This document shows, piece by piece, positions 2,023 to 63,099 of a stretch of 64,000 bases of DNA. Each line of letters starts with the position of its first letter. Position 1 is the first letter of the stretch. The stretch covers positions 108,438,001-108,502,000 of the forward strand of contig NC_042998.1 of NCBI RefSeq assembly GCF_006345805.1, read 5' to 3'. The notes below the pieces were generated by a model that saw only the letters and a list, made by a program, of their open reading frames with translations, ran no database searches and was not told where the DNA came from. The DNA comes from Octopus sinensis (taxonomy: Eukaryota). The translations under genes and the position numbers were made by a program.

Positions 2023-2812
2023 GTATGTATGTATGTATGTATGTATGTATGTACGTTTGTTTGTATGTATGTATGTATGTATGTATGTATGTATGTATGT
2101 CATTATTCAGGTTTATTTTGAGATTTCTTGCCAATAGAAAAAGATACTGTTTCTAACCTAGATTCAAGGCTCCTTCATTGGAATTTTAAGAACATCAGCA
2201 GGGTATGTATGCATGCATGTATGTATGTATGTATGATTGTATGTATGCATGCATGCATGTCTGTATGTATGTACGTATGTATGTATGTATGTATGTATGT
2301 ATGTATGTATGTATGTATGTATGTATATATGCATGTATATGTGCAGACCCGTATGTTTTGTTTGATGTATGCATTTTCATGCATACAGTTGTATATCTAG
2401 ACATCCTCATAGATACTGAAGGCTTGGATATGTAGTCTTTGAATCAGTTTTCTGCTTTCTAGATTTAAGAAGCCTAATTTCTCAAGATTGGTATTTAGTA
2501 AGTACCCCAATAATTACAAATATAAACCTGAATCTTTAATCTGGATAGAGTAACTGCGAATTTCTCAATAGTTCAGCGTAGGTATTTTTTCTTTCCCTGA
2601 TCAGTAGCTTTACTAGGAGCGGCTATGGCTTCCACCTTACTGTGGGTTTTTCACAGATGATTGCTGTCTCTGTACTTCTTTGTTGTCAATGATATTTATT
2701 ACTTTCCCTCCATGATCTCTCAGATGACTATTCTGTCCTCTTGCAAATCTGTATGGTTTGAAGCATAGGTGACAGATAGAACATGTCACCACTATTCCAG
2801 TGCCGTAGGACT
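2023..2812 (-). mobile_element. 5'-truncated R4-like (RLE) LINE, (CATA)n-associated family delta, copy 1
   Basis: Minus strand of 2400-2810 matches the ORF C-terminus at 43087-43302 (LLYPDYRFRFIFVII...LEKLGF). It is followed by 3' UTR, internal (CATA)n at 2204-2340, a 100-bp tip at 2101-2203 and a terminal (CATA)n at 2023-2100. Confidence 0.78.
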
Positions 2813-3463
2813 TTTAGTTGATGGAATGAGAAATGAGGTTACCATAAAGAGACACCTGTATGTCATTGGATTATAAGGATTAAAACGTGTACCACTTTCT
2901 GAGCCTTCTTGATTAATACCTGGTGACAAGTCTAAGTGAGATGACTAGTAATCATGTGAAACAACAGGTTTTACATCAGCATCCTAGAAAGATGCTGTAA
3001 AAAAAGCTGCGGGTCCCTCACGCACAGTGGTTTTGTTTCTCACTCTGACACCAAGGAAGCGTAATTCTACGTCCCTGGTATCAGATGAATTTTAATTGCA
3101 TGTGCTACTTAACCCATAGCTGGGACCCTGACCAGTGCTACTGCTCCGGGTCAAACTAGACGTGGGAAGAATAACAGTTAAGGGGTAGTATCACTCCTTA
3201 AAACCCTGGAACATGCATACATACAGACATACACAGACGCAACCGCTTGCACATGCACACACATCCATGTGTTCGTGAGCTTGTGTATATATGTGTGTCT
3301 GTGTGTACAGCTACTTATGTGGGTGTTTATATATATACGCATTACAAGCGTGCATATGAATGCACACATATCTACACGCAAGCACACTTACGCACTATGT
3401 GTGCCTTTGTGCGTGCATGTGTATCAGGAAATCTAGAACGAAAAAACATGAATAGTTAGTTAA

Positions 3464-3498
<35 letters not shown>

Positions 3499-6867: not shown

Positions 6868-7900
6868 TACACTGTTATCTGGTGTATCACAGGGATCTTT
6901 TGTTGGTCCGCTTTTGTTTGTTGCATACATTAATGACATAGATGCCAACTTAAATGAAGCCACAGTGCTGAAATATGCAGATGACATTAAGCTGTACCTT
7001 GAGATAAAAAGAACAGATCCTGAACAATATATATCTTTCCTGTAATCGGGTCTGGACATATTGGATCACGGACTGGCAACTCAAACTGGCTGTGGACAAG
7101 TGTACCACCATGCACTTTGGAGCGTTCACCTACTCCCTCCACAACATTAATATCAAGAAGTCTTCTTGTGAACGTGACCTGGGAATTACTGTCAGCAAGC
7201 AATTTGCACTAGACAAAACACATCCCTAAACTTGTCATGAAGGCCGAGGGTGTCTTGGCATCAATCAGCAAGACCTGTGTCAGCTGCTCTCCAGCTAAGG
7301 CTGTATATGGCTATGGTGTGACCACACTTGAGATTTGCATTACCATTCTGGAATCCCTATCTTGCTCAGAACATTGACCTCCTGGAGACTGTTCAGAGAC
7401 GTGTAACCAAGCGAATACCTTCTATCAGGCATCTACCATACTCTGAATGCCTTGCTTCCCTGGGCATGGATACATTGAAGCTCCAACGTCTGGTAACTGT
7501 CTTGGTAAACACCCACAAAATTATTAACCATCATACCAACAAGAACCTTGAGCACCTTTTTGAAATCCATGTGTCTAACACACGTGGGCATGACTACAAA
7601 GTCAGAAGACAGCACAGATACCATGACTTTCGAAAACGTTTGTTCACACTCAGAGTTGCTGAGGGACGAAACAAACTATCTGCATCAGTTATTGGCTTTT
7701 GAGACATTGTATCCTTTAAAACCTCCATGCTTCCGGGAATTCGCAAAAAATACACCTGATATCCTCCACTCCATACGCATGGGCACATGTATATCATGAC
7801 TCATACACTGTTCGCTTTCCTGACATTTGTACATAATTTTATGTACTATACATTCACCTTTGACAAGTTGTAGGGCACCTGAGCATTATACACAATTATT

Positions 7901-7902
<2 letters not shown>
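6868..7902 (+). mobile_element. 5'-truncated CR1-clade LINE ending in an (ATT)n tail
   Basis: RT motifs SGVSQGSFVGPLLFVAYIND and KYADDIKLY (ORF 6797-7045), and C-terminal FWNPYLAQNIDLLETVQRRVTKRIP...NTRGHDYK (ORF 7328-7702). The 3' UTR runs into (ATT)n at 7903. Confidence 0.85.

Positions 7903-7950
<48 letters not shown>
7903..7950. repeat. (ATT)n tract shared by the CR1 tail and the Dong-like 3' junction
   Basis: Read directly. Confidence 0.95.
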
Positions 7951-7953
<3 letters not shown>

Positions 7954-10900
7954 AAGTTTTATTTTTATAGCGTGCTTTCACTTCACTACCGAACGCAGCT
8001 CTGTGTGCCTTGGGTATGTGCTGTGATTTGTTGTGATGCTCTGATGGTTATTGTATGGAAAGTGTTCTGCGTAGGATGTGTGCAGTGCCTAGTAGTGCAA
8101 TTTTCTGTATGTTATATGTGTTTGTAAGTCCTGGTGTTTTTGTTATGTATTTGTCTGAATATTTTTTTATCATGCCTAATGCACCTACTATGATAGGAAT
8201 TGTTTCTGTTTTCAGGTTCCACATTCTAGTTACCTCTATTTCCAGGTCTTTGTATTTTGAGAGTTTCTCCATTTCTTTTAGAGACACGTTGTCATCTGCC
8301 GGTATTGATACATCAATTAGAAAGCATTTTTTTCTTCATGATCTCTGACAACTATATCTGGTCTGTTGGCCTTAATTTCTCTATCTGTGTGTATCGGCAT
8401 ACCCCAGAATATGGTTGCTTTCTCGTTTTCTGTGACCTTTTCTGGTGTGTGTCTATACCATCTTTTTTCTGTTGTTATTCCATAATGTTGGCATAGCTTC
8501 CAATGTATGTAGGTTCCAACTCTGTCATGTCTGTGAATATATTCCTTCTTAGCCAGGACTGGGCAGCTAGAGATAATATGATTTATTATTTCTTGTCCAT
8601 CTCCACATATTCTGCAGTTACTTGTAATATTTCTTTTCATTACATGTTTTTGGTAATTTCTGGTGGGGAGGCTTTGGTCTTGTGCTGCAATTAAAAATCC
8701 CTCTGTTTCTGCTTTGAGTCCTGAGCTTCTCAACCATTGCTGGGATTTTTCTTTGTCTATTTCTTTTGCGTTTAGTTTAGTCCAGTATTTACCATGAAGG
8801 GGCTTTTCTTGCCATCGTTTTATCATGGTTCGTTGCTGTTCTATTTTTAGTTTGGATTTCATTTTTTTTATAGCTTTTGTTGTTTCTTCATCTTCTTCTT
8901 CTTCTTCATGTTTATTAGGTGGTATGATTTCTTGTTTGTATTTGTCAGCTTCCTTAAATACTGAGAACAGTTTTTTGTTTTGCTCGTGTTTTGCTGCTAT
9001 CTGGATCAGTTTTCCTTCCTTCTGAAGTAGGTATTTTTGCAGTCCTATGGTGGTTATTTTATAGTAGTTTTCCAGCTGTATAAGGCCTCTACCACCTTCT
9101 ATACGTTGTATATATAGAGTTTCTATGACAGATTTTGGGTGATGCATCCTAGATCCTGTCAGTATTTTTCTTGTTTTCCTATCTATTTTGGATAGTTCAT
9201 TTCGTGTCCAGTTAAGGATATTGTAGATGTAACTTATAACTGGGACAGCTAAAGTGTTGATACCTATTATCTTGTTTTTAGCATTGAGCTCTGTTTTTAG
9301 TATTGATCTAACTCGTCTATAATATTCTTTTTTTATTTTCTCTTTCATTTGTGTGTGTTGTGTCTTATCTAGTTCATGGATTCCTAAGTATTTGTAAGTT
9401 TGGCTTTGCTCTAATTCTTTTATTTCATTGGTTTTATCTAGTGTGATGTTGTTACTCTTAACTAGTTTTCCTCTTTTCATGGTTACTTTGGCGCATTTTT
9501 CTAATCCAAATTTCATATCTATTTCTTTGGTAAATCCATGAACTGTCTTTAATAGTGTTTCCAGCTGTTTGTCATTTGCAGCGTATAGTTTTAGGTCATC
9601 CATATATAAAAGGTGGCTGATCGTTTTGCCGTAACATTTATATCCGCATCCAGTTCTATTTAGCATATCAGATAGAGGTGACTGTGCCAAGCAGAAAAGG
9701 AGTGGAGAGAGCGTGTCTCCCTGGAATATTCCTCTTCTAATGGGGATGTCTTTGGTTTTCATGAGTCCCTCTTTTGTTTGGAGGTGTAGGACTGTTTGCC
9801 ATTTATTCATAGAGTGCTCTATAAATTTTATGATTGTTGGTGCTACTTTGTTAATGGCTAGTGTTTCGAGGATCCATGTGTGGGGGATGCTATCAAACGC
9901 CTTTTTGTAGTCAATCCAGGCCATACTGAGGCCTTTCTTCTTTCTGTGGCTGTCTTCAGTTACGGCTTTATTAATCATTAGTTGATCTTTACAGCCATAT
10001 AAGCCTTTGCGGCATCCTTTCTGCTCTTCTGGGAACAGTTTGTTTTCGTCCAGGTGCTTGTTCAGCCTTTGCGATATCACTGCAGTAAATGCCTTGAACA
10101 TAGTAGGGAGGCAGGTTATTGGTCTGTAGTTTTCTGGTTTTGTTGTTTCATTTGATTTGGGAATTAAGATGGTTTTCCCCTTCGTGAGCCATTCAGGCAT
10201 TGTCTCTGGCTCTGGTAGTACTTTGTTAAAGTTTTCAGCCAGCTTTTTGTGCATTCCTGTTAGATATTTCAACCAGAAGTTGGGGATCTTGTCATGCCCA
10301 GGTGCCTTCCAGTTGCTTAGTTTTTGCAGTGCCTGGGTGACCTCTTCAGTTGTTATGGGGGTCCAAAGTTGTTCAGATGCCGAGTTTGTTATTTTCATAC
10401 TCCTTTTTTTTGGCTGTTCGTTCGCCGACCATATTTCTTTCCAGAATTCTTCCAATTCTTCTGCCGTTGGTGTTGCAGTGACTTCTATTTTATTTTTGCC
10501 CAGTTCTTGGTAGAACTTTTTGGGGTCGGAGTTGAACTTTTTGTTCTGTTCAAAGAAGCGTTGGCGTTTCTCGTACCGGCGGATCCTTTGAGCTTTGGCA
10601 AGGATATCTTGCTTTAGCTTTTCTTTTATCTCCGGTAAATCTTTTTCTGTGATGTTATATTTGCGGAGCATTTTTGTTCTCTTTTTGTTGCTCAGTAACG
10701 TTGCTTGTTTGCTGATTTCATTAAGAATCGACAGGTCTTTTCTAATTTTTTAAATTTTGTTTTGGATGTTATTTATCCAAACAAACAGGGTTTGTTTGGG
10801 TGGTGGTACTCCTGTTTGGGCGGGTTTGGGTGAGTATCCAGCTTCTTTTGTGGCTGCAGTGGCTGCTGCGTATATCAAGTCATTTAGTTCAGTGATATCA

Positions 10901-11940
10901 CTTTTTTTTGTTTCAGTAGCTAGTTCAGTGACGGCTAGGTTTATGTTGTTTATAATTGGTGTTGTTATTGCGTTTATTTTTATTCTTGGGAGGTATGGTC
11001 GGTATTCCATTTTGAGTTCTGTAGTTTTTAGTTCTTTATTATTTTATTTTTTATATTATCATAATCATTAGGCTCCCCTTCGTTGTTTACATCGTGTTTG
11101 TTGGGAATGTTGCGTTTGTCTTCGTGTTTTACAGTTTCAGTGTTTATATTATTGGGCATTGTTGTGTGGCTTCTATCTACATTTTCCTGGTGTATTTTTT
11201 CTTTTAAATGTTCTATTTCTATTTCTGATATTGTTTTGGCTTTGAGAATGTATCTTCGTACGTTAGCTAATTTATTAGGGTTCATTGCTGTATCCAAGTC
11301 TAAATCTCTATTATTTTCCTTCCATATTTTATATGTATGTGTTGTTGTATTTTCATTTTGTGGTAGAGCATTGCTGTGAAGTATGCGTGTAAGATAGAAA
11401 TGTATTCCTCACGTGTCCATTTACGTCTTTTGGGTTTTAATTGCGGGACATGAGGTACAACGTCCGGCCCATTATTTTGACGGTCGTCATTTTCGTAGAG
11501 TACCGGTCCGTTTATTTCTGTTGTCACATTATTTCGCACGTGTAGTTTTTCGTACATTTTTTGTTGTAGGTTTAATGTACGTACCGCTCGATGGTTATTC
11601 TTGGGTTGAATAGTATCGGTGGCATTTAATTTCTTCGTAGTTCCTTTGTACATGGTGTTTGAGGTCGGGGATGATCGTGTTGTTCCACGCATGTTTACAT
11701 GTGTTGTGTTAGAGGTGGAGATAATATCGAGTCAAAATACATCATTTGTTTCGAAAATAGTAATAAATTTCAATTCGTATTACTTACTCGGATATAGTCC
11801 AATTCTTTGTTAGTAAATCTTTGGCTCCATAGGGTGTCCTTGTTTTCGATGTTTGTGGATAGGTTTTGGAGCTCTGTATTTTCCTTCTTACATCTTAAAC
11901 GTCCCCGGTGTCTTCCATCTTAAACGTCCCCGGTGTCTTG
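7951..11940 (-). mobile_element. Near full-length R4/Dong-clade non-LTR retrotransposon (subfamily alpha, copy 1) inserted in (TAA)n
   Basis: Single-ORF layout: N-terminal RRKWTREEYISILHAYF, RT, CCHC and RLE. Flanked on both sides by (ATT)n at 7903-7950 and 11941-12077. Confidence 0.92.
8048..11692 (-). pseudogene. RT-RLE polyprotein of alpha-1, broken by a few frameshifts (longest piece 8317-10671, 784 aa)
   Basis: KAPGHDKIPNFWLK, NYRPITCLPTMFK, AWIDYKKAFDSIPH, RGIFQGDTLSPLLF, HLLYMDDLKLY and YKYLG (RT). CRICGDGQEIINHIISSC (CCHC). NRPDIVVRD...IDVSIP...EKLSKYKDL (PD-(D/E)xK). The frameshift near 8325 is a 1-nt deletion relative to the sister copy near 25630. Confidence 0.92.
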
Positions 11941-11949
11941 TTATTATTA

Positions 11950-11985
<36 letters not shown>

Positions 11986-11999
11986 TATTATTATTATTA

Positions 12000-12057
<58 letters not shown>

Positions 12058-12077
12058 TTATCATTATTATTATTATT
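11941..12077. repeat. (ATT)n spacer between stacked Dong-like elements
   Basis: Read directly. Confidence 0.95.
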
Positions 12078-13540
12078 CTATGTTTGACTTTTGCTTTATA
12101 TTTGTACAAGTTGGCTCCAAGTCTCACCCAGAGACCCCAAGAGACAACAGGCTTGGAAGTTCATGTTGTTGTTATGCCTAGTGTGCCATATATTTGGGGG
12201 TGGGGGTGTTGTACTAATGAATGTCTAAAAAAAGTTTTTTTAATTTTTTTTTTTAAACCGAAAATTATGTTTGTTTTAAACCTTGAGATTACATAGAAAG
12301 TATTTTGCGTAGGATATGAGCAGTTCCCATGAGCACTATCTTTTGAATTTCTGCCATTTTGGGGTTTCCTGGTATCTGAGTTAGGTAGCTATCAGCCCCT
12401 TTTGCTATCATTCCCAGGGCACCTATGACAACAGGTATTGTTTTAGTCTTCAGGTTCCACATTTTGCTGATTTCTATTTCAAGATCTTTATATTTGCTCA
12501 GTTTTTGGTAGGTCTTGACAGATACGTTTATATCGATTGGGACAGTCATATCAATGAGGAGGCATATTCTTTGTTTGAAGTCTTTCAATATGATGTCTGG
12601 CCTATTTGCATCTATCTTTCTGTCAGTTTGAATGGTGAAGTTCCAGAGGAGTGAGATGTGGTCATTTTCAAGCACTGGGTGTGGTTTGTGTTCCCACCAG
12701 TTTTTTTCATGGGGCAAATCCAGGTTTTTACAGATTACCCAGTGAATATATTGTGCAGCTCTATCGTGCCTGTTGAGATACTCTGTAGGCGCTAGGAGAC
12801 TGCACTTGGAGACCACATGGTCAATGGTTTCATTTTGTTGCTTGCATACACGACACGTTGGACTACTTCTGATCTTTAATATGTTGGCCTGGTAGTTTCT
12901 TGTTGGTAGGCATTGATCTTGAGCTGCTATGATAAACCCCTCTGTTTCAGATTTTAAGCCAGAGGCCATTAGCCATTGATGGGTCAGGGCTTTGTCAACA
13001 TCTGCATTATTTGCTCTCTTTGGGTATTTGCCATAGAGAGGTTTTTCTTGCCATTTATCATTCAGAATATCTAAGGCCGCAGATTTAGCACGGGTTTTCA
13101 TGCGCTTAGCTTTTTCTGTGCCTGTTTCTTGTATTTCTATCACTAATTCCGAAATTTGTTGTATTCGGAATTCACTTAGATATTCCTTTGCCTGTTTTGT
13201 TACTGAGTATGATGCTTTCTTGTTTTCATGTTTTGAGACAAGTTTTAACATCCAATCCTCAGAGTTTTTCAGGTAGGTGTCTAGGCCAATTGTAGCAATC
13301 TTCATTGTTATTGCCAGTTGTAAAAGTCCACGGCCTCCCTCTTTTCTTGGCAGATAAAGTCGTTCTGTATCTGCCTTAGGGTGGTGCATTCTATGCATTG
13401 TCAACAGTTTTCGTATTTTTCTGTCAAGATTACATATTTCAGTAATTGACCAGTTAACGATATTGAAACTGTAAGTCACGACTTGTATGGCTAATGCATT
13501 GATCGCTTCGATCCTGTTTCTCGCATTCATCTCTGTCTTT
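12078..13540 (-). mobile_element. 5'-truncated R4/Dong-like LINE, subfamily beta, in (TAA)n
   Basis: Uninterrupted ORF 12289-13530 (413 aa) with CRVCKQQNETIDHVVSKC and NRPDIILKD...LIDMTVP...QKLSKYKDL. Its 3' UTR differs from alpha. (ATT)n on both sides. Confidence 0.9.
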
Positions 13541-13566
13541 ATTATTATTATTATTATTATTATTAT

Positions 13567-14122
13567 TGAGTGAGAGAGCAGTTCATGCCATCAAAGTGAC
13601 ACTGGGGTAAAATATACGAAGCCCAATATACCCATCATGACTACCCGTCTGATAAAGGTACACCAGGCACATGCATCACAACCATATGTGCGCGACATGG
13701 TGATCTCATATCAAGATAAACAGCACATGACCTTGCAGGTGGGGCCCAGTTAGATTTTTCTTCATTTTGAGTAGCCCATCCTGCTCAAACGGTCCCTGAA
13801 TAAGGGTTGTTTAAGAATGTTGAAAGAACCACCCATGTTTCCAGAGGTGAACTATTCAAACCCCAAAGAATCCCTCTCAACACATGGCTATGATGCTCCC
13901 CCACTACTTCTGCTCGTGATCAGAGATGCACATATCGTCAGCCACTAAGGGACATGCTCAACTGGTTAAGGTCAAACAACTGACAAGCAAATCTGTGGTA
14001 TTGAGCAGAATATTTGCTGTAGCCCATCTTTTATACCAAGACAAAACAATGTACGTGATAACACTTCCAATCAGTTAAGATCAGAAGCCATGAGAGCCAC
14101 TGCCTGGTACTGCATCAGGGCA
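13567..14122. mobile_element. 556-bp non-coding interspersed repeat embedded in (ATT)n, copy 1
   Basis: Colinear over its whole length with 24571-25128. Ends are TGAGTGAGAG...CATCAGGGCA. (ATT)n on both sides. No ORF. Confidence 0.75.
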
Positions 14123-14144
14123 TTTATTATTATTATTATTATTA

Positions 14145-14176
<32 letters not shown>

Positions 14177-14275
14177 ATTATTATTATTATTATTATTATT
14201 GTTGTTGTTGTTTGTTACTGTTGTTATTATTGCTGTTGCTGTTGTTGTTGTTATTATAATTATTATTATTATTTA
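14123..14275. repeat. (ATT)n/(GTT)n tract closing array 1
   Basis: Read directly. Confidence 0.9.
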
Positions 14276-16907: not shown

Positions 16908-16943
<36 letters not shown>

Positions 16944-17040
16944 TGTGTCCATGTCTTCATATACCAATAATTATTTATTAGCATTTCACGAAATTATAAG
17001 TGTTTGACATATGGTAAAATTATTTTATTATTATTATTAT

Positions 17041-17696: not shown

Positions 17697-17742
<46 letters not shown>

Positions 17743-17743
<1 letters not shown>

Positions 17744-21120: not shown

Positions 21121-21205
<85 letters not shown>

Positions 21206-21371: not shown

Positions 21372-21400
<29 letters not shown>

Positions 21401-33242: not shown

Positions 33243-33487
33243 TTAACGCATTCCCAATTTTGCCTATCAAAGGAAGAAACGCAGCACTGACAATCTCATT
33301 TTAAAGATTTCTATGACCGATGATGGGAAGGGAACGATTAACCCCAGTTCAGAGTGCTTGAATTTAGTAATGCTACCGAAGGGTCAGCTGATATTGTTCA
33401 ACTGGCAACAGATTAATTGGACGTTTATACATACATACATGCATACATACATACATACATACATACATACATACATACATACACAGC

Positions 33488-33590
33488 CTGTTGTTGATGT
33501 TGAAATTCCAATGGAAGTGCCGTGGATCTAGGTTAGAAACCGGCTCTTTCTCTATTGGCAAGAAATCTTGAAATAAAACTGAACAATGAC
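33488..33590 (+). mobile_element. Solo 3'-tip unit of the delta family between CATA-type repeats
   Basis: Homologous to 43484-43584, 2101-2203 (reverse complement) and 59961-60048 (reverse complement). Preceded by (CATA)n at 33430-33482. Confidence 0.75.
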
Positions 33591-33600
33591 ATATATACAT

Positions 33601-42242: not shown

Positions 42243-43378
42243 TAATGACACCTATAACAAAGCACGTGTCACTAAAGAATATGATAGCCAAATAAAAGAA
42301 ATTTCGACCTCAGAACTCTCGGCATTCAATAAAACAGTGGTCCACACTGTGTTTGCAGTGACAGTACTCATACCAACATTTCAGCTGCTTGATTGGACGC
42401 TTGATGAGATCAGAGGCATTGATGTGAAAACCCGAAAAATACTAACTAGCAGGCATAATTTCCATATAAACAGTGACGTAGACCGCTTCCACCTAAAACG
42501 AAAACAAAGCGACAGCAGCTGGCTTAACAACGATCCAAAAGCCTTTGAATAACTCTTCAGCAACCACCAAGTGTCGAAGTGCATTCTATGACAAAGTCTG
42601 CATACATTAGGCTGATAACACCATAAGACTTGGAAAGCAGCTCCTTGAACAACTTCGTTGTCTGATAACCTACAATACATGCCCAAAGAAGTCGCACGAC
42701 CCTACTGCAACGTATCATCAGATAAAGGGATGAGCGTATATGAGCAGGAGACTATGCATGGATATATTAATAGAAAGCTCTGATATGATGGTAACCGTAT
42801 TATCTACCGCTGAGGCATGATGTAGCTAGGACGCTCTATAATGAAATCTGTCGAAAGATCAACCTAGAGGACAAAGAAATAAGAATATGGTAGAAGCCAT
42901 AGCCACTCATATTAAAAAGGAGTACAGGTGGAATGTACTAGTGAAGACCAATATCAGTGAAGAACAACAGACCTGATATAATGATTTATTTTAGAGAAGA
43001 GAAACTGTGTACAGTTGTGGAAATTAGCTTCCAAGTAGATGTTAATATAAAGCTGAAAATCAATGAAAACTATTTAGGTTGAACTATTGAAAAATCTGCA
43101 GTTACTATATCCAGACTACAAGTTCAGGTTTATATCTGTAATTATTGGGGCCCTGCTATATGTAACACACTGCCTAAATACCAATCTTGAGAAATTAGGC
43201 TTCTCAAAACCAGAAAGAAGAAAGCTAATTCGAAGACTACAGATCCAGTTCATCACTGAAACTGTAAAAATCTGTAAAACTTTTCAGAAGTTTATCATTT
43301 AAATATATATGAGCATGTCTCGATAAACAACAATATGCATGTGAAAACATAGATGAAACAAAACATAGAAAGCTGTAC

Positions 43379-43411
<33 letters not shown>

Positions 43412-43590
43412 CATACATACATACATACATACATACATACATACATACATACATACATGCATATACATACGAATAAAAATACGCTGTTGCTGAGTTTGAA
43501 ATTCCAATGAAGGAGCCTTGGATCTTGGTTAGAAACCAGCTTTTTTTCTATTGACAAGAAATCTTGAAAAAACTGAAAAATGACATACAT
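42243..43590 (+). mobile_element. 5'-truncated delta-family R4-like LINE, copy 2, flanked by CATA-type repeats
   Basis: KEISTSELSAFNKTVVHTVFAVTVLIPTFQLLDWTLDEIRGIDVKTRKILT...NSDVDRFHLKRK and C-terminus LQLLYPDYKFRFISVIIGAL...KTFQKFII-stop (43302). Then 3' UTR, (CATA)n 43382-43470, tip 43484-43584 and (CATA)n. Confidence 0.85.
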
Positions 43591-52049: not shown

Positions 52050-52389
52050 ACATACATATATATATATACATGTTGAGATATTTCATAAAGATGTATACGT
52101 AGATATCTGTATTAATAATACACGTGTACATATATGCATATATGCGTGTAAATGTTGTACACGTGTGCCGATATGCATGTTTACAGATTGGTGGATATAA
52201 AATTATACTGTAAATGCAAGTATTTATTGACATACATATATTTAATGAATATACCTTACAATTATGACATATTACATACATATATACACAATTAGATAAC
52301 AAAACAAAAACATAACAAAGGCGAATAAAATATATGTATACACAAATATAGGTAATCCGTATACGTCTCATTATCACTTCCTACATACG

Positions 52390-52750
52390 TGCATGCATAC
52401 ATACAAATTTACATACATACATACATAGATACATACATACATACACACATACATACATACATACATACATACATACATACATACATGCATACATACTTAC
52501 TTACATACATACATACAAACATACATATATACATACATACATACTTACATACATACATACATACATACATGCATACATATATACATACACACGCACACAT
52601 ACATACATACATACATACATACACACGCACACATACATACATACATACATACATACATACATACATACATACATACATACATACATACATACATACATAC
52701 ATACACACGCACACATACATACATACATACATACATGCATGCATATATAT
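52390..52750. repeat. Long (CATA)n microsatellite inside a TA/CA-rich block spanning about 51.0-53.1 kb
   Basis: Read directly. Confidence 0.95.
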
Positions 52751-53525: not shown

Positions 53526-55099
53526 TTGTATATTTGTTCAATGACATATATTTTCAGAGGTTATATTGAGTGCTGATATCTTCATAGTTACTCCTCTAAG
53601 TTTCATGGTTCCGATTACAAGGCGACTGGTTCGGAATATTGAAACTCCGAGATATGACTCACCTAAACACACATAAACGCTTCTATGTATATATGGTTTT
53701 TCTTTGAATTTTACTCACGTTCTTAAGAGGATAAAAGCTGATCACTGTCAAAGAGACAAGCCTTTTTGAGTTTAGAGAGTTCCTAGTATTTGTAAATATA
53801 TGGTTGAGTTGCTGTGTTGGTCGAGCTGTCGACGTACACACTCAGTGTGCGCATTTCTTTCACCTAAAGAATCTCAGCTGGAGAATTTTTGGAATGTCTT
53901 ACAAATCTTCACCGTCACTAATAGATTGGATTTGGAGAATCTACGTCATACATGTATGTATGTATGTATGTATGTATGTATGTATGTATGTATGTATGTA
54001 TGTATGTATGTATGTATGTATGCATGCATGTATGTATGTGTTGTGTGTGTCTTGTGTGTGTGTGTGCATAAGAGTGCATGTGTGTTTAGATGTTCGTATG
54101 TGGACATGCGTGCGAGTGCGTATATGTGTGTATAGTGACCATATAGACTATATTGTAATAAAAAAGCTAATACATGTTCCACTTTTTATGAAAACGTAAA
54201 TAGTCTCTATCCTGTTGTTTTGTGTAGCCTCAATTCAGCAATGGTAAATTATATTTTTGTTACGAAGTTTTTGGTCGAACGACGTGGTATGAATCCTCAT
54301 TCTTTTGTAGTTTAGTTTACAATCATACTACATACTCTGACGCGCACTGTTGAATAAGTGTGGAATTTTGTGTTAAAGTCTAAAGATATTGTACTTTCTT
54401 CTTTTCAGTCTGTTTCTGTTTGCTCGTAGATTTTCCACAGCGGTATCGGCAAGATGGACTAGGTTTCAAGCACGACAATTGCTGTACCATACAGTTAACA
54501 ATTGCGCTGTACATCCGAGCACACTAGAGAAGAAGCTTCTATGCTATCGCTCAAATTCCAAGAAATTGAATACCGTCTTTAAAATATTTTCACATTCAGG
54601 ACTAATACTGTACGCTGTATGCACATCTGATATGAGTCCCAATAATGCTAGCACAGTAGATTTTGTCATATCGAAGTGAAAATGTGTTGAGTTAGCTTGA
54701 CATTGTTTTTCTCTGTCAAGACTAAAGAAGTTGTCCGGTGACCAATGGAGAGGTCGCTAGTTTCAAAAATGTTCATATAAATACATTACTATTCTATAAA
54801 CTTTTATATTTGTGTGCGTGTCTGTGTCTACGTTAGTGTGAATGTGTACAGAATTAATATTGTATATTTTCATCATTATTTTTTATAATGTTTTTAATTA
54901 TATTATATTACTGGATTTTCAGAAACATTAGCGCACTTAAGAAAATACTTTGTGCTATTTTTTTTGGATCTTTACGTTTCGAAGTCAATTGTCCTGGGGT
55001 TAATTTTACCGGTCAACCTTCAGGATCGACAAAATTATATAGCAGTAAATTACTAGGATCAATGGCATCAACTAAAACCTTCCTTCAGAATTTCTAGAC

Positions 55100-56800
55100 T
55101 CATGCATGCACACTTGTTCCTTCGGCGTTTGTATTAGATGCTGAAAGGATATGATAGAATTTGAAAGACTGTTTAGATCGATGTTCCGTCTCTACAGTCT
55201 TGTTTTTGTTTTACGTAATGACAAACTATATCATTACTGATATGTAAATTCCTGGTGCCAGTTTATATTTTAACATTAATAGCATGAATTTCATCTGGCA
55301 TCTAATCGAATAACCCAAAGCTTAGTATGTATTCCGTCACAACAAACACACAAAGGCTATCGATATTTACCTGCGTAAATTTCTGAGGCTAATATTTTCC
55401 TTATTCTAGTGTTATATTCCCAGTCACATGCTCCTTCTTATACGTTCCATCACAGGAAAATTTACATGTATTTTAAGTATCCTAATCAGATATCAGAGAA
55501 ATAGTTGGACCATTGATAATTATGTTACCAGATGGGTTTATAGTTCATCTTCCCTTTACAAACCATTCAGGAACTTTTATCCTGGCCAAATTTCATCTTT
55601 ATATCGTTTGAGAATGTCATAACTAAACCAAGATTTTCCTTCATATCGTCCATATTTTGGCATATATTTTCAGATCATCTAAAAAGAGGCGATGTGTTTA
55701 GCTGGTGCTTCTCTTTCAGATTTGCTTCACAAAACGGACAAAGTATTTATTAAAAGTATATACAGCATCATTGCTGCCCTCCCCCAAATAATCTGCAATG
55801 CTATATCTTATAGGTGATAATAAAACTAATTTCCTGTGCTTAACTTCAGAATGGTTGCCCTTGACAAAGTCATCTTGTTTATGTCCTTGATAATATTATC
55901 TGAAACTTTAGCAAGAACGTCTACGAGTAGAGTCAAATGCTTTCGTGTAATCCAGATTGACTGCACCAAGTTCCTTCTTACGCTGAAGTACCTCTAACAT
56001 CACAGTTCTCTCGATCCAGAGTTGTCTTGCACATCTCCAAACTCCATTCTTTCCAGCTCTTTGTCCAGCAGTAATGATATTACTATCAAAGTAATCCTGG
56101 AAGGACAGCTTCCAATATACTAAAAATATTTTATACACGAGATTCTGGTATGTAATTGGCTGGCAACTTTTTAGCAAGTGAATAGCATTATTTTTGGCTG
56201 TGAGTTTTGTATCTGCTATCGCTAATCAGCTTGGTAGGTTTATGTCTCTATTGAGAACTTGGAGGTAATTTTTCTTTCGTTTAGGTATCCTACAATAAAC
56301 TCTCTTTCTGGCTCGTTTCTAATCCCGATTTTTTTCATCACAGTCTCAGGAGTGTCGCTATTGACTGTTTTTTGTTTTATACAAAGACAATATTTTCTTC
56401 GGATTACTTGTAACTACTCCGTTCCGTTATTAAACTCCGATGGTTTCACATTTTCCTCCAGAATAACGCTATATCTTCCTGAGAAGTAGCCGTCGTAATG
56501 TTTATTGATTGTCTTGTCGTGTCTCTGTAGACAACTGAATCGTTTCAATTGAATTTCTAGTCAATCCTTTTACTTTTTGCAACTTTCTTCTGAATCCGAA
56601 GTTTTTCGCTGACGATTTTCGGTCCTCGTTTGAGGGTGATCAGTCTCTATTCCAATCTTCTTTTTTAATTATCTTCAAACATTTTTTGTTTTTGTTATGG
56701 CCTTTTCTTGGCAGGTAATAAGCATTGAGAAATGAAAGATGATTTCCGTAGAACGACGATCCCTTTAGCTATTTTCAAAACCAACCGTGAAATTGTTTAC
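55100..56800 (-). mobile_element. Heavily decayed R4-like LINE (pre-RT and RT region)
   Basis: CQPITYQNLVYKIF...LDYTKAFDS (ORF 55908-56177), HRLFLDDLKIYAK near 55690, and upstream QEDIALFWRK. Confidence 0.7.
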
Positions 56801-57951: not shown

Positions 57952-58042
57952 CAGATCACAACTATTGTTATCAGCAGACCACAAATATTGTTATCAGGGG
58001 ACCACAATTATTGTTATCAGATCACAAATATTGTTATCAGCA
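57952..58042. repeat. Minisatellite, about 4 copies of a 20-23-bp unit
   Basis: TATTGTTATCAG recurs four times, separated by variants of (G)ACCACAAA. Confidence 0.85.
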
Positions 58043-58229
58043 CTGGTACTGCAAATGCCTTGTGGAATATTCTTTTGTAAGAAGAGAGTACACAATTACC
58101 TTAGTTTTCTAAGTCTGATATAATGTTCTTTGTTCACAACACGTTCTTATGATAAATTTTCCTCAAAGCCTATAATTACCTGTATACACAGTGTGGACTA
58201 TGAGAGATAGAGAGACCGTTGATTTCTAT

Positions 58230-59880
58230 GTTTGGCAGGGAGTGGCATGATTGATTTTCCACGTTAAGCTGTCAAATATGAATACTTCTTTTGGCCAAAT
58301 TCCATTCCAATGTCAGCAGAAAATATTAACTCATGCTGGTTTGCTTTTTGGCATTGTAGCATTTTTAGCATAGATCTTCAGATTATCCACAAATTATGGG
58401 TTACGTTGGTATCAATAGCATTATATACCCTAGCATATAACCACTGGATTCATATAAGGGAAATGATAACAAATTTAATGCCAAAAGAAATACAGAAAAA
58501 CGTTTCCTTCGAACATTCCCTGTAACATCGGAGACGATCATTCTGTAAGGATTATTGCCCAGAGATTTGTGAGAATTTCAGTGACAGTGACTATTACAAT
58601 TGATACTTTAGCCAATTTTAGAGACTTCAGCAAGCATGAGTGGGAATAGAGTCGAATGTTTTCCTATAATAAACCCAAACTGTCACAAGATTTCTGCAGT
58701 TTTCTTACTTCGAGTAACCCCCACTCTCGTTTCTTTTCATATGCGTACTGATCCTGGAGGTATTGATTGAGAGAGCTTGTGTAAAGTTTGTATAAAATAT
58801 GTAGGCACACAATATATATATAGCTTTCTGCCAACTCGTTGGTTTTATCCTTGGCTATAAGATTCGTCCGTGCTATATAAACCAAATTTGTTACGTCAAT
58901 CTGGCTTTCCACAGTTCTTTTGAATACACATATTAATGGTTTTCTCGTACTAGAATAAGTCTCTTCCATAACTTTTCCAGTTATGTAGCTTACCTATTTT
59001 CCAATTATGTAGTTTGAAGGTTTCAGGGTCAATTGTGTATGTTTTACTGTAGATAATGTCAAAGTATTCCTTCTGAACTGTTTTTAGCAACGATGCATTC
59101 TGGTTGAAATCGTTCCGGATCTTATACCAGGATGATTCTTAATTTTTAGAAGTGGCTTTATTAAAGATAATGTTTTTCTTCCTCATTTCACTCAGGAGCT
59201 TGGTATGTAGAGTCGCCGTAGAATTTTATTTTATTTTGCATAAGAGGTGTGAACTATTATTCCCCTTATATTTTATTATTGGTGTTAACCTTCCAATATG
59301 GCGGCGCAGATTGTTGACCCTTTCTTCAAGTTTAGTTTTCCACATAGTTTGCGTTTATTTGATAATTTGGATGGTTCTTAGTACTTTGAGAAAATTGGAT
59401 AGCGTCACGAGAGATGGAATAACAACTGCTATCTGAAAGCGATATTTTTCAAAGCAAGATGCTTGTTGCAGAATTTCGTCCCAGTATCCCCTTAGCCGCT
59501 TCATATAAACAACAGAAGGATCATCTCAGACTTTTTCATACCACAGCAGTAAATCTTGACTTATTTGTAAAGACTAAGTGAAATGGGAAGAGTACTAACG
59601 CCACCTTAAGTAACTTACAGATTTTGTAGTAATACTTGTATTGGAATTCTTAACAATATCAGTCAGGATATTAAAAGCAAAATTCCACAGGGTGTAAGAT
59701 AAAATTTATAATCTGGTCTCAATAACGCTAAGTTGGTTCGTAAAAGGCAGACTCTTATTTATAAAAGAAGAAATCATTTGGTTACTGATTTTGGCTCGAG
59801 AGTCGGCATAATTATGGAAGAAATTGCACAAAAGGACATTTTTAAACGGTCTGTTCACCTGCTCGTTTGATGTTGACATG
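58230..59880 (-). mobile_element. Heavily decayed R4-like LINE, N-terminal half to RT, with its 5' end next to (CATA)n
   Basis: Minus strand QDLLLWYEKV*DDPSVVYMKRLRGYWDE (about 59560-59480), WKTKLEERVNNLRRHIGRL, and NVTHNL.VDNLKIYA near 58380-58420. Confidence 0.6.
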
Positions 59881-59960
59881 CATAGATGTATGTATGTATG
59901 TATGTATGTATGTATGTATGTATGTATGTATGTATGTATGTATGTATGTATGTATGTATA

Positions 59961-61690
59961 TCATTACTCAGTTTTATTTCAAGATTTCATGCCAATAGAG
60001 AAAAACAAGTTTCTTGCCTAGATCCATGAGTACTTCATTTGAATTTTTGTATGTATGTATGTATGTAAAGAAAAGGGTAAAGCCCCACTTCGGTCATGAA
60101 TGATCATGAGATTGCACCCTGAAAGTTACCCTCCGGGGCATAAGTCCGGGCAAAGTTGTTTGAAGAAGACAGGTAGTCATCCATGCATACCAGCCTCCCC
60201 TACCACCTCACCGATGTTATCCAAGGGAAAGGTAAAGGCCGATCCAGCTTGGCACCAGTGATGTCGCAACTCATTTCTACAGCTGAGTGAATTAGAGCAA
60301 CGTGAAATAAAGTATCTTGCTCGAGAACACAACACAGCCTGGTCCGGGAATCGAACTCACTATCTCATGATTGTAAGCCCGACGCTCTAACCACTGAGCC
60401 ATGCGCCTTTACTCTAACTACTGAGCCATGTGCCTTCACTCTAACCACTGAGCCATGCACCTTCACATGTATGTATGTACATGTGCAGATTTGTAGGTTT
60501 TGTTGTTGGTATGTATTCTCATGAATATAGCTGCATGTCTATGCATGCTCATATATATTTAAATGATAAACTTCTGGAAAGTCTTACAGATTTTTTACAG
60601 TTCCAGTGATGGTTTGGATCTTTTCGTCTTCGAATCAGCTATCCCATTTCTAGTTTTCAAAAGCGTAATTTCTCAAGATTGGTATTTAGGCAGTGTGTTA
60701 CACATCCCAGTGACCCAATAAATTACAGGTATAAACCTGAATTTGTAATCTGGATAGAGTAACTGTAGATTTCTCAATAGTTCAGCGTAGGTATTTTCTT
60801 TTTCGCTGATCTTTAGCTTTATGTTAACATCGGCTGGGCAGCTGATTTCCACAAGTGTACGCAGCTTCTCTTGTCTATCTCAAATCACTATGACAAGTCT
60901 ATTATGTTTACATTTTATTGAGTTTTCTCAGGGACATTCTACCGGTACTCCAGTCTATTATGAGTGACTTTGGCTTCTGCCATACTGTGGATTCTTGTTT
61001 CTTTGTCCTCAGGGTTGTTCTTTTGACGGATCTTATTATACAATGCCCTAGCTAGGACATCATGTCTCATTAGCAGATAAAACAATGACATTTTCGGACA
61101 ACTGCTTATGATGTAGGCGATATCTTCGGTGTTAACTCCACAAAGTTTGCATCGGTTATCACAGTTTGGTGCTTTTCCTGCGTCTCTGTTCCATTTGTGC
61201 ATTAAATATTTGGTTGATATTTCTTGTTCTTGGATTGCAAACGCATACCTTTCAAAGTGGTAGATAGTACTCCGGTTGTTGGTCCATGATAGACTGCTTT
61301 GATGATCAATGTTGCTATCATCCCGGAGCTTTCTGTTAACATGTTCATGCATGGTCTTCTGCTGATATACGCTCATCCTTTCATCTGATGATACAACACA
61401 GTAGAGTCGTGCAACTTCATTGGCTATGTATTTAAGGAGAATAGACAAGGAATGTTGCTCAAGGAGCTGCTTTCTAAATCTTACGATGTTATCAGCCTCA
61501 TGTATGCAAACTTGGTCAAGGAATAGACTTCAACACTTATTAGTCAAAAGGCATTGCCAAAGAGATATGATACAATGTTCAAAGGCAGTCTGAATCGATA
61601 TTGTCTCTGCCCTTTTGTTTTCGCTTTAGGTAGAGGCGGTCTACGTCACTGTTGATGTGGAAATTATGTGTGTTGGTTAGTATCTTCCGG
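59961..61690 (-). mobile_element. 5'-truncated delta-family R4-like LINE, copy 3, with (CATA)n at both ends
   Basis: Starts RKILTNTHNFHINSDVDRLYLKRKQKG immediately after (CATA)n at 61691-61750. Has CKLCGVNTEDIAYIISSC (CCHC, ORF 60939-61448) and ends KTFQKFII-stop at 60559. Then UTR, internal (CATA)n split by a SINE, tip 59961-60048, and tail 59887-59960. Confidence 0.87.
60067..60464 (-). mobile_element. tRNA-derived SINE family 2, full length, with triplicated 27-bp head
   Basis: Reverse complement GGCGCATGGCTCAGTGGTTAGAGCG (A box)...GAGTTCGATTCCCGG (B box)...GTGTTCTCGAGCAAGATACTT core. Flanked by ATGTATGTA. Confidence 0.88.
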
Positions 61691-63099
61691 GTATGTATGT
61701 ATGTATGTATGTATGTATGTATGTATGTATGTATGTATGTATGTATGTATGTGCCTCTGCATATTTATATATATGTATGCATGCGTATATACATTCATAC
61801 ACACATACGCACATACATGTCTATTTTGGTCACACGTGTACTCACAGGATCACCCGGCAAGTTGGTATGTCTACTTTCTCTTCAATCAACACTAAACATG
61901 TGTTATATGCTAAACACGCACATATGTGTGTGTGTGTGTGATCAGTTATAGGTGATTTCTTCAGTACGATTATGGTATTTATCAAAATTATTAAGAGTGT
62001 GACTATCATCACCCCTATCCCATGAATATATTCGTCGTCGACATCGTTCAGATCATCAGAATTATTAATTTTTGGACATGCAGAATCAGTAAAATGCCGG
62101 ACAAAATGCTTCGTGTCCTGAATTTATATACAGTACTGCAAACGTCAAGCTTGTTTCAATTCTTTCAAGATCGTTAACATAAGAATCAATCAAATACTTG
62201 GATTGTATAAACTGAACCTTCAATTTATGGTCTTTTGCCTACTCTAAACTTAATGTTAAACCAGAAGGAAACAGAGCAAGCGACATAAAAAGGGTATCAG
62301 ATTAATTTGGGATACTAACACCAAAGCCGTTGTAGGAAAAAATTTACCACTGTTGAAGTGAGATTTAAAATGAAAGGTGAAACCAGGAAGCACTTCACAA
62401 CAACCCTGTAGAAGACGAACTAGTCTTCGTATCAGTCTACTTTGGAAAGTAGTGAAAATATGCGTGGCCGATATTCCTCCAGAAGTAAACAGCTAATGGT
62501 TGGTGTCGCCTGTTCTCTTCTGTATAGAGGATAAAACGTACTGAGCCCCCCCCCCCACGCACACATAAACAAAAAACAAAAAATAAATAAACAAGAAATT
62601 ATGGAAGCTACGCCGGACCTGGACAATTTATCAGCTTGCTCAGAAGGCACAGTCTCGGAATTACGTATGGTGATACAAGCCATCAGAAGGCTTTCCGTCC
62701 ACAGTAAAGGTGGGAAGAGAGGGGAGATCCCCTCCTTTGCTGCCGACACCATCATCAATGCATCAAAAATATCAGCAACAAAACACCAGCACCAAGAGTA
62801 ACATGCTGCCACAGCAACAATAATAGCAACAACAATGACAACAACAACAATAAAACAAGCATCCGTGAAAGCAACTGTAATATCAGCAGCAGCAACAGCA
62901 ACAACGGTAACTACATCAACAATAGAAGGAACAGTAGCAAAAAAAAACGCTGCCATCAAGGAATTCGTTGGTAGGGACATTGTTACTGGAAACTGAACGC
63001 GTCGCTCCTGGTGCTCCAAGCTTAAAAGATCGTGTTAACTAGTTCGCTAAGCAGTTTTAATGAATGCAATCGTTAATAGTGGTTCACAGTGGAAAAGCG

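What the first reader, a model, noticed from the sequence alone, without database searches (positions are those of the whole stretch)
2023..61750. An RLE LINE family that lives in (CATA)n microsatellites and carries its own target inside its 3' UTR
Seen: three independent copies (2023-2812 minus, 42243-43590 plus, 59961-61690 minus) share one order: ORF end (KTFQKFII in the two better-preserved copies), short UTR, (CATA)n, a unique tip of about 100 bp, then (CATA)n. Two of them also start directly after CATA repeats, and (CATA)n is always on the sense strand. Known: R4-clade Dong elements target (TAA)n, and I recall (ACAY)n targeting for the APE-bearing R1-clade Waldo elements but not for an RLE element (literature not checked). 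Inference: this is an R4-type family specific for a tetranucleotide. Each insertion deposits two new target tracts, so it would seed its own landing sites and help explain the abundance of (TATG)n here.
Basis: partly seen in the sequence, partly recalled or inferred. Interest (0 to 1): 0.72.

Follow-up and report, generated by a model that had tools for sequence, protein, structure and literature searches.

The report
Octopus LINE that targets (CATA)n microsatellites
The window (octopus DNA) holds decayed copies of a jumping gene that inserts only into CATA-repeat microsatellites; the finding matters mainly because relatives from other assemblies have the same CATA flanks, though the principle of microsatellite targeting is already known.

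Summary
Three 5'-truncated, decayed LINE 3' ends share the order ORF end, UTR, (CATA)n, ~105-nt tip, (CATA)n. I found more: a solo tip at 33484-33592, a 5'-complete relative (58020-59885) starting at copy 3's tail tract, and an internal fragment (55164-56267).

The protein is an RT-CCHC-RLE type, homologous to solved R2 proteins, with no APE domain. Nine of 11 5' junctions, in the window and in 8 related loci, directly follow sense-strand (CATA)n. Background in the window is 1%. On a tree, every (CATA)n-flanked element falls on one side of a fully supported branch. The window's own (TAA)n-flanked Dong-like elements fall on the other side.

The tip is not a hitchhiker. It is the subclade's conserved 3'-terminal UTR module, with a stem-loop that covaries across relatives. 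Among the loci examined, only the octopus family and one divergent sister contig have a (CATA)n tract inside the 3' UTR.

R4/Dong membership is plausible but untested, because no reference sequences were available. Self-seeding of targets remains an inference. I call it a new variant of a known kind, pending a Repbase/Dfam check.

The parts
2023..2099 (-). copy c1: terminal (CATA)n tract
2100..2203 (-). copy c1: tip, the conserved 3'-terminal UTR module with stem-loop
   Evidence: 72 bits
2204..2338 (-). copy c1: internal (CATA)n tract, imperfect
2339..2850 (-). copy c1: proximal UTR and decayed C-terminal ORF (RLE region); ~190-bp internal deletion, ORF end lost, 5' limit approximate and not at a CATA tract
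33427..33483 (+). (CATA)14 in front of the solo tip; either the internal tract of a copy truncated there or the target
33484..33592 (+). solo tip with no LINE body upstream; followed by a degenerate CATA/TG repeat
   Evidence: 79 bits
42206..42242 (+). copy c2: imperfect (CATA)n at the 5' junction
42243..43302 (+). copy c2: 5'-truncated body (end of RT/thumb, linker, CCHC lost in a ~270-bp gap relative to c3 in the alignment, RLE, C-terminus KTFQKFII*), many stops and frameshifts
43303..43381 (+). copy c2: proximal 3' UTR
43382..43463 (+). copy c2: internal (CATA)20
43464..43583 (+). copy c2: tip
   Evidence: 83 bits
43584..43679 (+). copy c2: terminal (CATA)n, imperfect
61691..61752 (-). copy c3: perfect (CATA)15 at the 5' junction (target)
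60559..61690 (-). copy c3: 5'-truncated body; best-kept piece 60942-61529 (196 aa with CCHC); RLE; ends KTFQKFII*
60480..60558 (-). copy c3: proximal 3' UTR
60048..60479 (-). copy c3: internal (CATA)n (60467-60479 and 60048-60067) split by a sense-oriented SINE-like insert (about 60068-60466)
59960..60047 (-). copy c3: tip (5' part shorter than in the other copies)
   Evidence: 60 bits
59886..59959 (-). perfect (CATA)18: 3' tail of c3 and at the same time the 5' flank of element A
58020..59885 (-). element A: heavily decayed, 5'-complete member of the (CATA)n clade. About 235 nt of 5' UTR starts at the tract; N-terminal motif ...VYMKRLRGYWDE...; RT up to about aa 690. Lies head-to-tail with c3.
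55164..56267 (-). fragment B: internal RT fragment (about aa 355-800) of a (CATA)n-clade element; ends not identified

Best explanation
These are old, dead copies of a non-LTR retrotransposon family of the R2 group. The family has a single ORF with a central reverse transcriptase, a CCHC motif and a C-terminal restriction-like endonuclease (RLE). It inserts specifically into (CATA)n/(TATG)n microsatellites in one orientation.

Shown:
- the protein architecture;
- the sense-strand (CATA)n at the 5' and 3' junctions of truncated and full-length copies;
- (CATA)n flanks on 9 sampled relatives spread across the tree;
- a conserved, covarying stem-loop 35-50 nt upstream of the tail. The octopus 'tip' is this module.

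Inferred from the established R2 mechanism (target-primed reverse transcription):
- The RLE nicks the (TATG)n strand.
- The (CAUA)n 3' end of the RNA pairs with the nicked DNA and primes cDNA synthesis.
- The stem-loop is the element the RT recognises on its own RNA.
- Reverse transcription often stops early, which gives the 5'-truncated copies.
- The new copy regenerates a (CATA)n tract at its 3' end. Later copies can therefore land head-to-tail, as seen for c3 and A in the window and for the three copies in L010.

In the octopus lineage the 3' UTR also carries an internal (CATA)n between the proximal UTR and the terminal module. A copy truncated or recombined at that tract leaves a solo tip flanked by CATA, as at 33.4 kb. 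Each insertion therefore adds at least one new tract.
For: Architecture:
- A phmmer search with the 196-aa piece of c3 finds 333 relatives, including full-length ORFs.
- These have RVT_1, weak zf-RVT and no APE domain.
- P0154 matches solved R2 proteins at E 1e-26 to 1e-20.
- A C-terminal profile that includes the window pieces matches the R2 CCHC and RLE regions at E 2e-7.

Target:
- L005, L006, L007 and L008 are full-length elements with sense (CATA)n on both sides.
- L012 is 5'-truncated and preceded by (CATA)n.
- L009 and L013 have (CATA)n tails.
- L010 holds three head-to-tail copies. A (CATA)7 precedes the first and separates the first two, and (CATA)n follows the third.
- 9 of 11 5' junctions follow (CATA)3 or longer, against 1.06% background.

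Phylogeny: all 10 CATA-flanked rows lie on one side of a 100% SH-aLRT branch. The three (TAA)n-flanked window elements lie on the other side. The octopus rows nest in a 100% supported 12-row subclade with L005, L006 and L008-L010.

Tip as part of the LINE:
- It is present after every LINE 3' end seen: c1, c2, c3 and the O. vulgaris locus L001.
- A homolog is present in L002, a sister family at 74% amino-acid identity.
- It aligns with the terminal UTR of L005, L006 and L008-L010.
- RNAalifold predicts the hairpin, with 5 of 7 pairs showing compensatory changes.
- The covariation score is 0.624 against 0.215 in shuffles (0 of 500 reach it) and 0.06-0.13 when the partners are slid.
- A covariance model finds it only at LINE 3' ends and at the solo copy.

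Host: the closest proteins are from Octopus vulgaris (90% identity) and O. bimaculoides (68% identity by BLASTP).
Against: - No intact copy and no RT of the tip family itself is in the window. Architecture is therefore inferred from relatives that are 35-66% identical.
- c1 and L003 have no CATA at their 5' ends, and L001 has almost none at its 3' end. Decay may explain this, but that is not shown.
- The hosts of the ENA contigs are unknown. Two of them are short-read contigs that simply end in the repeat.
- Cleavage specificity, priming by the tail and the role of the stem-loop are not tested.
- The tip's folding energy alone is unremarkable (z = -1.6).
- The stem-loop was not detected in the more basal L007, L012 and L013.
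- Only 1 of 5 tips in about 105 kb of octopus DNA is solo. There is no sign so far that the internal tract causes frequent tail-only copies.
Confidence: 0.85

Rival explanations
1. The tip is a separate, short non-autonomous element (SINE-like) that itself homes to (CATA)n. It has repeatedly landed in the (CATA)n tail of LINE copies, and the true LINE ends at the first CATA tract.
For: A solo tip flanked by CATA exists at 33427-33600. The tip is always separated from the LINE body by a microsatellite whose length varies from copy to copy.
Against: - All four LINE 3' ends carry exactly one tip, in the same orientation and order.
- The divergent L002 family has it too.
- The tip core is homologous to the 3'-terminal UTR of relatives that have no internal tract (L005, L006, L008-L010), with compensatory stem changes.
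- The tip has no internal promoter motifs or tRNA-like head. ARAGORN and Rfam find nothing.
- No LINE 3' end without a tip was found.
Confidence: 0.06
2. There is no target specificity. (CATA)n is only the element's own 3' tail, as in many LINEs with simple-repeat tails. The CATA at 5' ends comes from tandem arrays or from chance in a CATA-rich genome.
For: - The 3' tract is expected for any LINE with a repeat tail.
- Tandem arrays exist (L010, c3/A), so some 5' tracts are the tails of upstream copies.
- Short-read contigs L005 and L006 end inside the repeat.
Against: - Copies truncated at different points (c2, c3, L001, L012) and full-length copies in long contigs (L007, L008) are preceded by tracts of up to 260 bp. 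Where I read the sequence upstream (c3, L007, L008, L012) there is unique sequence and no upstream element or tip.
- The background rate is 0.1-1%.
- The sister (TAA)n elements in the same window sit just as faithfully in (TAA)n.
Confidence: 0.05
3. This rival concerns filing only. The clade may be HERO or a separate unnamed clade of the R2 group rather than R4/Dong. The mechanism would be the same but the label different.
For: - No R4, Dong, Rex6 or HERO reference sequence could be placed in the tree.
- The clade is separated from the window's (TAA)n Dong-like elements by a long branch (1.55 + 0.63 substitutions per site).
- Some HERO families are reported to be microsatellite-specific (PMC4640811, citing Repbase Reports 2014).
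- The O. vulgaris annotation lists both Dong-R4 and Hero LINEs (PMC13282606).
Against: - The relatives align with the window's (TAA)n-flanked element over about 850 aa at 31-34% identity, E 1e-118 to 1e-136. R2 proteins match at only E 1e-26.
- There are no N-terminal zinc fingers, and there is a conserved three-helix N-terminal domain. Both agree with the description of R4/Dong in PMC7998251.
- Dong-R4 is the abundant RLE LINE class annotated in octopus (PMC13282606, PMC8967140).
Confidence: 0.3

Closest known systems
Dong (R4 clade; Bombyx mori, Anopheles, Biomphalaria and others)
   Same: Both are single-ORF LINEs with an RT and a C-terminal restriction-like endonuclease and no N-terminal zinc finger. 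Both insert orientation-specifically into a microsatellite and end in that repeat (PMC3812793, PMC7998251). The window's own (TAA)n-flanked elements are the closest in-window comparators of the (CATA)n clade.
   Different: The target is (TAA)n, not (CATA)n. The (CATA)n elements form a separate, fully supported group. I found no report in the held literature of an internal copy of the target inside a Dong 3' UTR, and none is visible in the one window Dong-like 3' end I read.
Waldo (R1 clade; WaldoAg1/2, WaldoFs1)
   Same: It targets (ACAY)n, which includes (ACAT)n = (CATA)n (PMC3812793).
   Different: Waldo carries an N-terminal APE endonuclease and belongs to a distant clade. The relatives here have no APE domain and do have a C-terminal RLE. 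The shared target is convergent.
Togen and microsatellite-specific HERO families (RLE LINEs)
   Same: They are RLE-bearing LINEs specific for a microsatellite: Togen for (TG)n, and some leech HERO families (PMC4640811).
   Different: They have different repeats and, as far as can be told, belong to different clades. No sequences were available for comparison.
R2 (28S rDNA-specific; solved structures 8gh6, 9nl2, 9dou)
   Same: The RT, CCHC and RLE regions are homologous. R2 is the model for target-primed reverse transcription and for recognition of a structured 3' UTR by the RT (established knowledge).
   Different: R2 has N-terminal zinc-finger and Myb domains and targets a unique rDNA site. 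The elements here have no N-terminal zinc finger and target a tetranucleotide repeat.

Membership tests
RLE-bearing non-LTR retrotransposons (R2 group) | Reverse transcriptase domain in a single long ORF | tested here: met
   RVT_1 is found in the full-length relatives P0045, P0118, P0154 and others. In the window, c1-c3 are truncated downstream of the RT core, but elements A and B keep RT-homologous stretches.
RLE-bearing non-LTR retrotransposons (R2 group) | C-terminal CCHC motif followed by a PD-(D/E)XK restriction-like endonuclease | tested here: met
   C..C...H....C, RPD...(I/V)E(I/V)S..D.N...K..Y are conserved in relatives and in the window pieces. The profile matches the CCHC and RLE segments of solved R2 proteins at E about 2e-7.
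RLE-bearing non-LTR retrotransposons (R2 group) | No apurinic/apyrimidinic (APE) endonuclease domain | tested here: met
   No Exo_endo_phos hit in the eight relatives scanned with Pfam.
R4/Dong clade | RT phylogeny groups it with R4, Dong and Rex6 reference sequences | not testable with these tools
   No reference sequences could be obtained, and the hit tables carry no names. Indirect evidence only: the closest in-window comparators are the window's (TAA)n-flanked Dong-like elements.
R4/Dong clade | No N-terminal zinc fingers (unlike R2) | tested here: met
   No C..C...H..[HC] motif in the first 350 residues of 12 relatives, and no zinc-finger Pfam hit in the eight relatives scanned with Pfam. 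The criterion is taken from PMC7998251.
R4/Dong clade | Divergent Myb/SANT-like domain near the N-terminus (PMC7998251) | tested here: inconclusive
   A conserved N-terminal motif exists (A5) and is modelled as three helices (pLDDT 79). Pfam, a PDB profile search and Foldseek give no significant Myb/SANT match.
Dong proper | Inserts into (TAA)n | tested here: not met
   All junctions are (CATA)n. The (TAA)n-flanked elements of the window are a separate group.
Waldo (R1 clade) | N-terminal APE endonuclease; R1-clade RT | tested here: not met
   No APE domain is present, and there is a C-terminal RLE. Only the target motif is shared.
SINE (considered for the tip alone) | Own pol III promoter or tRNA/5S/7SL-derived head, and occurrence independent of the LINE body | tested here: not met
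   ARAGORN and Rfam find nothing in the window. 4 of 5 tips are attached to LINE bodies.

The most novel reading that the evidence does not exclude
The octopus family carries a copy of its own target inside its 3' UTR, and this makes it self-propagating in two ways. First, every insertion plants new (CATA)n landing sites. Second, the internal tract lets the nascent cDNA pair with the upstream target. This would produce tail-only mini-copies (solo tips) that behave like a SINE made by the LINE itself. LINE and microsatellite would then expand together. More broadly, (CATA)n specificity would define an old, widespread and so far undescribed sister lineage of Dong, in which a change of target from one microsatellite to another can be studied.
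Probability: 0.2. Interest if true: 0.65.

Novelty: new variant of a known kind. Interest (0 to 1): 0.5.

Why it matters
Site-specific RLE LINEs are the model for how a retrotransposon chooses its target. R2-type elements are now being used for programmable insertion (PMC13586686, PMC13580325).

This window offers two related lineages in one genome, one faithful to (TAA)n and the other to (CATA)n. They form a natural pair for asking which protein or RNA features set the specificity.

The conserved 3' stem-loop next to the tail gives a concrete candidate for the RNA element that the RT recognises.

For octopus genomics, the result explains part of the association between CATA microsatellites and 'Dong-R4' annotations. 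It also warns that microsatellite markers of this motif may sit in repeated elements.

The principle itself, LINEs that target and regenerate microsatellites, is established. The gain is incremental unless the self-seeding idea proves true genome-wide.

Tried and rejected
- Rfam scan of the 5' UTRs of L005-L007 for an HDV-like ribozyme, as R2 has. It returned only spurious mir-297-type hits on the microsatellite.
- Rfam and ARAGORN on the whole window returned nothing.
- Naming the clade from database names failed. The hits are almost all unnamed ENA or JGI proteins.
- No reference R4, Dong or HERO sequences were in the paper supplements I checked.
- Tests of the N-terminal domain for Myb/SANT by Pfam, PDB profile search, AlphaFold and Foldseek were inconclusive.
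- L003 (O. bimaculoides) is truncated at both ends and so uninformative for junctions. L004 is body only.
- Other large CATA tracts (39732-39904, 45783-45847, 52382-52749, 53952-54039) carry no recognisable tip or LINE body.
- Literature searches for an RLE LINE specific for (CATA)n, in all eight rotations and complements, found nothing. Repbase Reports and Dfam are not in the library, so this is weak evidence of novelty. PMC4400214 and PMC3312299 are not held.
- Thermodynamic stability of the tip alone is not significant (z = -1.6). The structural case rests on covariation.
Full report
**What is there**

On its sense strand each runs: decayed ORF end, about 80 nt of UTR, a (CATA)n tract, a unique stretch of about 105 nt (the 'tip'), then another (CATA)n tract. 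The tip reads AAATTCCAATGAAGGAGCCTTGGATCTAGGTTAGAAACCGGCTC...CTATTGGCAAGAAATCTTGAAATAAAACTGAATAATGA.

c2 and c3 end in KTFQKFII*. c1 has lost that end and has an internal deletion of about 190 bp. The copies are 72-78% identical, full of stops and frameshifts, differently truncated at the 5' end, and in different flanks. They are therefore independent old insertions.

I found further members:
- A solo tip at 33484-33592, preceded by (CATA)14 and with no LINE body.
- Element A at 58020-59885 on the minus strand. It is heavily decayed but 5'-complete, and its 5' UTR begins exactly at the (CATA)18 tract that is also the tail of c3.
- Fragment B at 55164-56267, an internal RT fragment.

**Host**

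The C-terminal piece of c2 is 90% identical to a predicted Octopus vulgaris protein. The 196-aa piece of c3 is 68% identical by BLASTP (70% over matched stretches in the phmmer search) to an O. bimaculoides protein. The O. vulgaris locus (L001) is another 5'-truncated copy. It follows (CCAT)n-CATACATAC and has the same UTR, a short internal CATA run and the tip.

**What kind of element**

- A full-library phmmer search with the 196-aa piece of c3 gave 333 relatives, including full-length ORFs of about 1085-1136 aa.
- These have a central RVT_1 domain, a weak zf-RVT match and no APE domain.
- P0154 matches solved R2 retrotransposon proteins at E 1e-26 to 1e-20.
- A profile of the C-terminal 240 residues, with the window's own pieces aligned in, matches the CCHC and the PD-(D/E)XK nuclease segments of R2 at E about 2e-7.

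This is an RLE-bearing LINE of the R2 group.

None of 12 relatives checked has an N-terminal CCHH zinc finger. They share a conserved N-terminal motif, RRNRDYS..FKW[TS].ELN.D.Y..Y....GYMKRLK.LWD..HP. AlphaFold models it as three helices at pLDDT 79. I could not show that it is the Myb/SANT-like domain reported for R4/Dong (PMC7998251), because Pfam, a PDB profile search and Foldseek were all non-significant.

**Target specificity**

The 3' tract alone would prove nothing, since many LINEs end in a simple repeat. The 5' junctions are the test.

In octopus DNA, c2, c3, A and L001 all start directly after sense-strand CATA repeats, at four different points of the element. c1 and L003 do not. Only 1.06% of strand-specific positions in the window, and 0.1-0.3% in the other two octopus loci, have such a 12-mer upstream.

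Nine loci of related elements from public assemblies give the same picture:
- L005, L006, L007 and L008 are full-length with (CATA)n on both sides.
- L012 is truncated inside the N-terminal domain and is preceded by (CATA)n.
- L009 and L013 end in (CATA)n.
- L010 holds three head-to-tail copies. A (CATA)7 precedes the first and separates the first two, and (CATA)n follows the third.

**A control inside the window**

Between 7.9 and 26 kb the minus strand holds six fragments of a related RLE LINE. Each is bracketed by (TTA)n tracts on the plus strand, which read (TAA)n in the element's sense. One is nearly full-length, with a 784-aa open piece and the 3' end ...AAAATAAAACTTCTGAA(TAA)n. These are Dong-like by target and architecture.

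In a maximum-likelihood tree of 27 proteins, the three (TAA)n elements are one side of a branch with 100% SH-aLRT support. All ten (CATA)n-flanked rows are on the other side, spread from the base (L007) to the tips. The octopus rows nest in a 100%-supported subclade with L005, L006 and L008-L010. Each lineage therefore keeps to its own microsatellite in the same genome. The spread of CATA-flanked rows across the tree suggests the trait is old and clade-wide.

**The tip**

The rival reading is that the tip is an independent SINE-like element that keeps landing in the LINE's tail. Several observations count against it:
- All four LINE 3' ends seen carry one tip in the same place.
- A sister family at 74% amino-acid identity (L002) has a recognisable homolog after a (CATA)3.
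- The tip's core aligns with the last 80-90 nt of the 3' UTR of relatives that have no internal tract. The shared pattern is [A]GCCTT-hairpin-CGGC[T], 35-50 nt before the tail.
- The hairpin arms differ between elements but stay complementary: ATCCC/GGGAT, TTATC/GATAA, GCTGTA/TACAGC, GCTATA/TATAGC.
- RNAalifold predicts this helix on its own, with compensatory changes in 5 of 7 pairs.
- On the pair count, 74.7% of cells are paired against 55% in shuffles. The covariation score is 0.624 against 0.215 (0 of 500 shuffles reach it) and 0.06-0.13 when the partners are slid.
- A covariance model finds the module only at these LINE 3' ends and at the solo copy. It finds it nowhere else in 154 kb.

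The tip is therefore the subclade's conserved 3'-terminal RNA module. The oddity of the octopus family, and to a small degree of L002, is the (CATA)n tract upstream of that module.

**Likely mechanism**

The steps below are inferred from the established R2 model of target-primed reverse transcription.
1. The RLE nicks the (TATG)n strand.
2. The (CAUA)n 3' end of the RNA pairs with it and primes cDNA synthesis.
3. The stem-loop is the likely handle by which the RT picks its own RNA.
4. Early termination gives 5'-truncated copies.

Because a tract is regenerated at the 3' end, later insertions can land there. This gives head-to-tail pairs (c3/A) and arrays (L010). The Dong-like elements show the same pattern with (TAA)n.

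The internal tract is carried by every copy, at 12 to 136 bp. Each insertion therefore adds at least one tract. A copy truncated or recombined at that tract leaves a solo tip.

**What is not shown**

- That the element explains the abundance of the motif. About 47% of CATA-type tract bases in the window touch an element (my sum over the tracts). A targeting element would give that correlation in any case.
- That solo tips are frequent. Only one of five tips is solo.
- Clade membership in R4/Dong.

**Novelty**

- Microsatellite-specific LINEs are known: Dong for (TAA)n, Waldo for (ACAY)n with an APE endonuclease, Togen for (TG)n, and some HERO families (PMC3812793, PMC4640811).
- Dong-R4 LINEs are known to be abundant in octopus, and some are reported as recently active (PMC13282606, PMC9115989, PMC8967140).
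- I found no paper in the held library describing an RLE LINE specific for (CATA)n, or one carrying its target inside its 3' UTR. Repbase Reports and Dfam could not be checked.

I rate it a new variant of a known kind, of moderate interest.

Noticed in passing
window 7895-25821, minus strand: An array of six Dong-like RLE LINE fragments: 8051-11001 nearly full length with a 784-aa open piece, then 12292-13539, 17933-20449, 21594-22067, 22349-24452 and 25357-25818. Each is bracketed by (TTA)n tracts, which read (TAA)n in the element's sense. Several lie head-to-tail and share a tract.
   Followed up: partly
window 60068-60466 (minus strand); second partial copy at 48478-48687: A SINE-like insert of about 400 nt sits in sense orientation inside c3's internal (CATA)n. 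It has tRNA-like A/B-box motifs by eye, but ARAGORN calls no tRNA. Its head carries a 27-nt unit repeated three times (60385-60466). Whether this SINE uses the (CATA)n LINE machinery is unknown.
   Followed up: partly
tips in the window; L008 6640-6660, L009 3300-3315, L010 3495-3510, L012 about 6045: An AATAAA motif (GAAATAAA[AT]) lies 12-30 nt upstream of the (CATA)n tail in the octopus tips and several relatives. It is absent from L005 and L006. It may be a polyadenylation signal that would place the RNA 3' end inside the first CATA repeats.
   Followed up: no
L010 2880-3340 and the whole locus: Three head-to-tail copies of one element, the first two encoding identical 761-aa proteins, the first two separated by (CATA)7 (the junction before the third was not read). 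The 3' UTR holds a long array of a roughly 19-nt unit (GTCTATATTGTCTGRGTCT). The contig has 2x coverage, so an assembly artefact is not excluded.
   Followed up: no
L007 6403-7016: Directly after the (CATA)19 tail lies a 614-nt stretch that ends in an antisense tRNA-like sequence, followed by more CATA. It is probably an unrelated SINE inserted in the tail tract in the opposite orientation.
   Followed up: no
L002 225-262: In this divergent copy, an antisense (TATG)n tract of about 40 nt sits inside the RLE coding region, at the codons that read ...TYAELL... in relatives. It looks like a microsatellite grown from a TATG seed inside the ORF.
   Followed up: no
L005 60-100 and L006 85-120: The 5' UTRs of two full-length relatives share GCGCAG...GACGTGTGGATTAYCGCTC just after the 5' (CATA)n. 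No Rfam ribozyme match was found, and its function is unknown.
   Followed up: partly
window 52382-52749; also 39732-39904, 45783-45847 and 53952-54039: Large (CATA)n-type tracts, up to 368 bp, with no recognisable LINE body or tip next to them. They may be empty targets or remnants.
   Followed up: partly
L008 2480-2506 and 6840-6870: The same roughly 26-nt sequence (ATGTTTRAGKTCCCCTCTGGTGCTGG) occurs just upstream of the 5' CATA tract and about 80 nt downstream of the 3' tracts. The element may sit inside another repeat that itself carries the microsatellite.
   Followed up: no
window 29550-30704 and 36108-37091: Further weak RT/RLE-like matches at 22-38% identity to the same query proteins. 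They are probably other decayed LINE fragments and were not classified.
   Followed up: no
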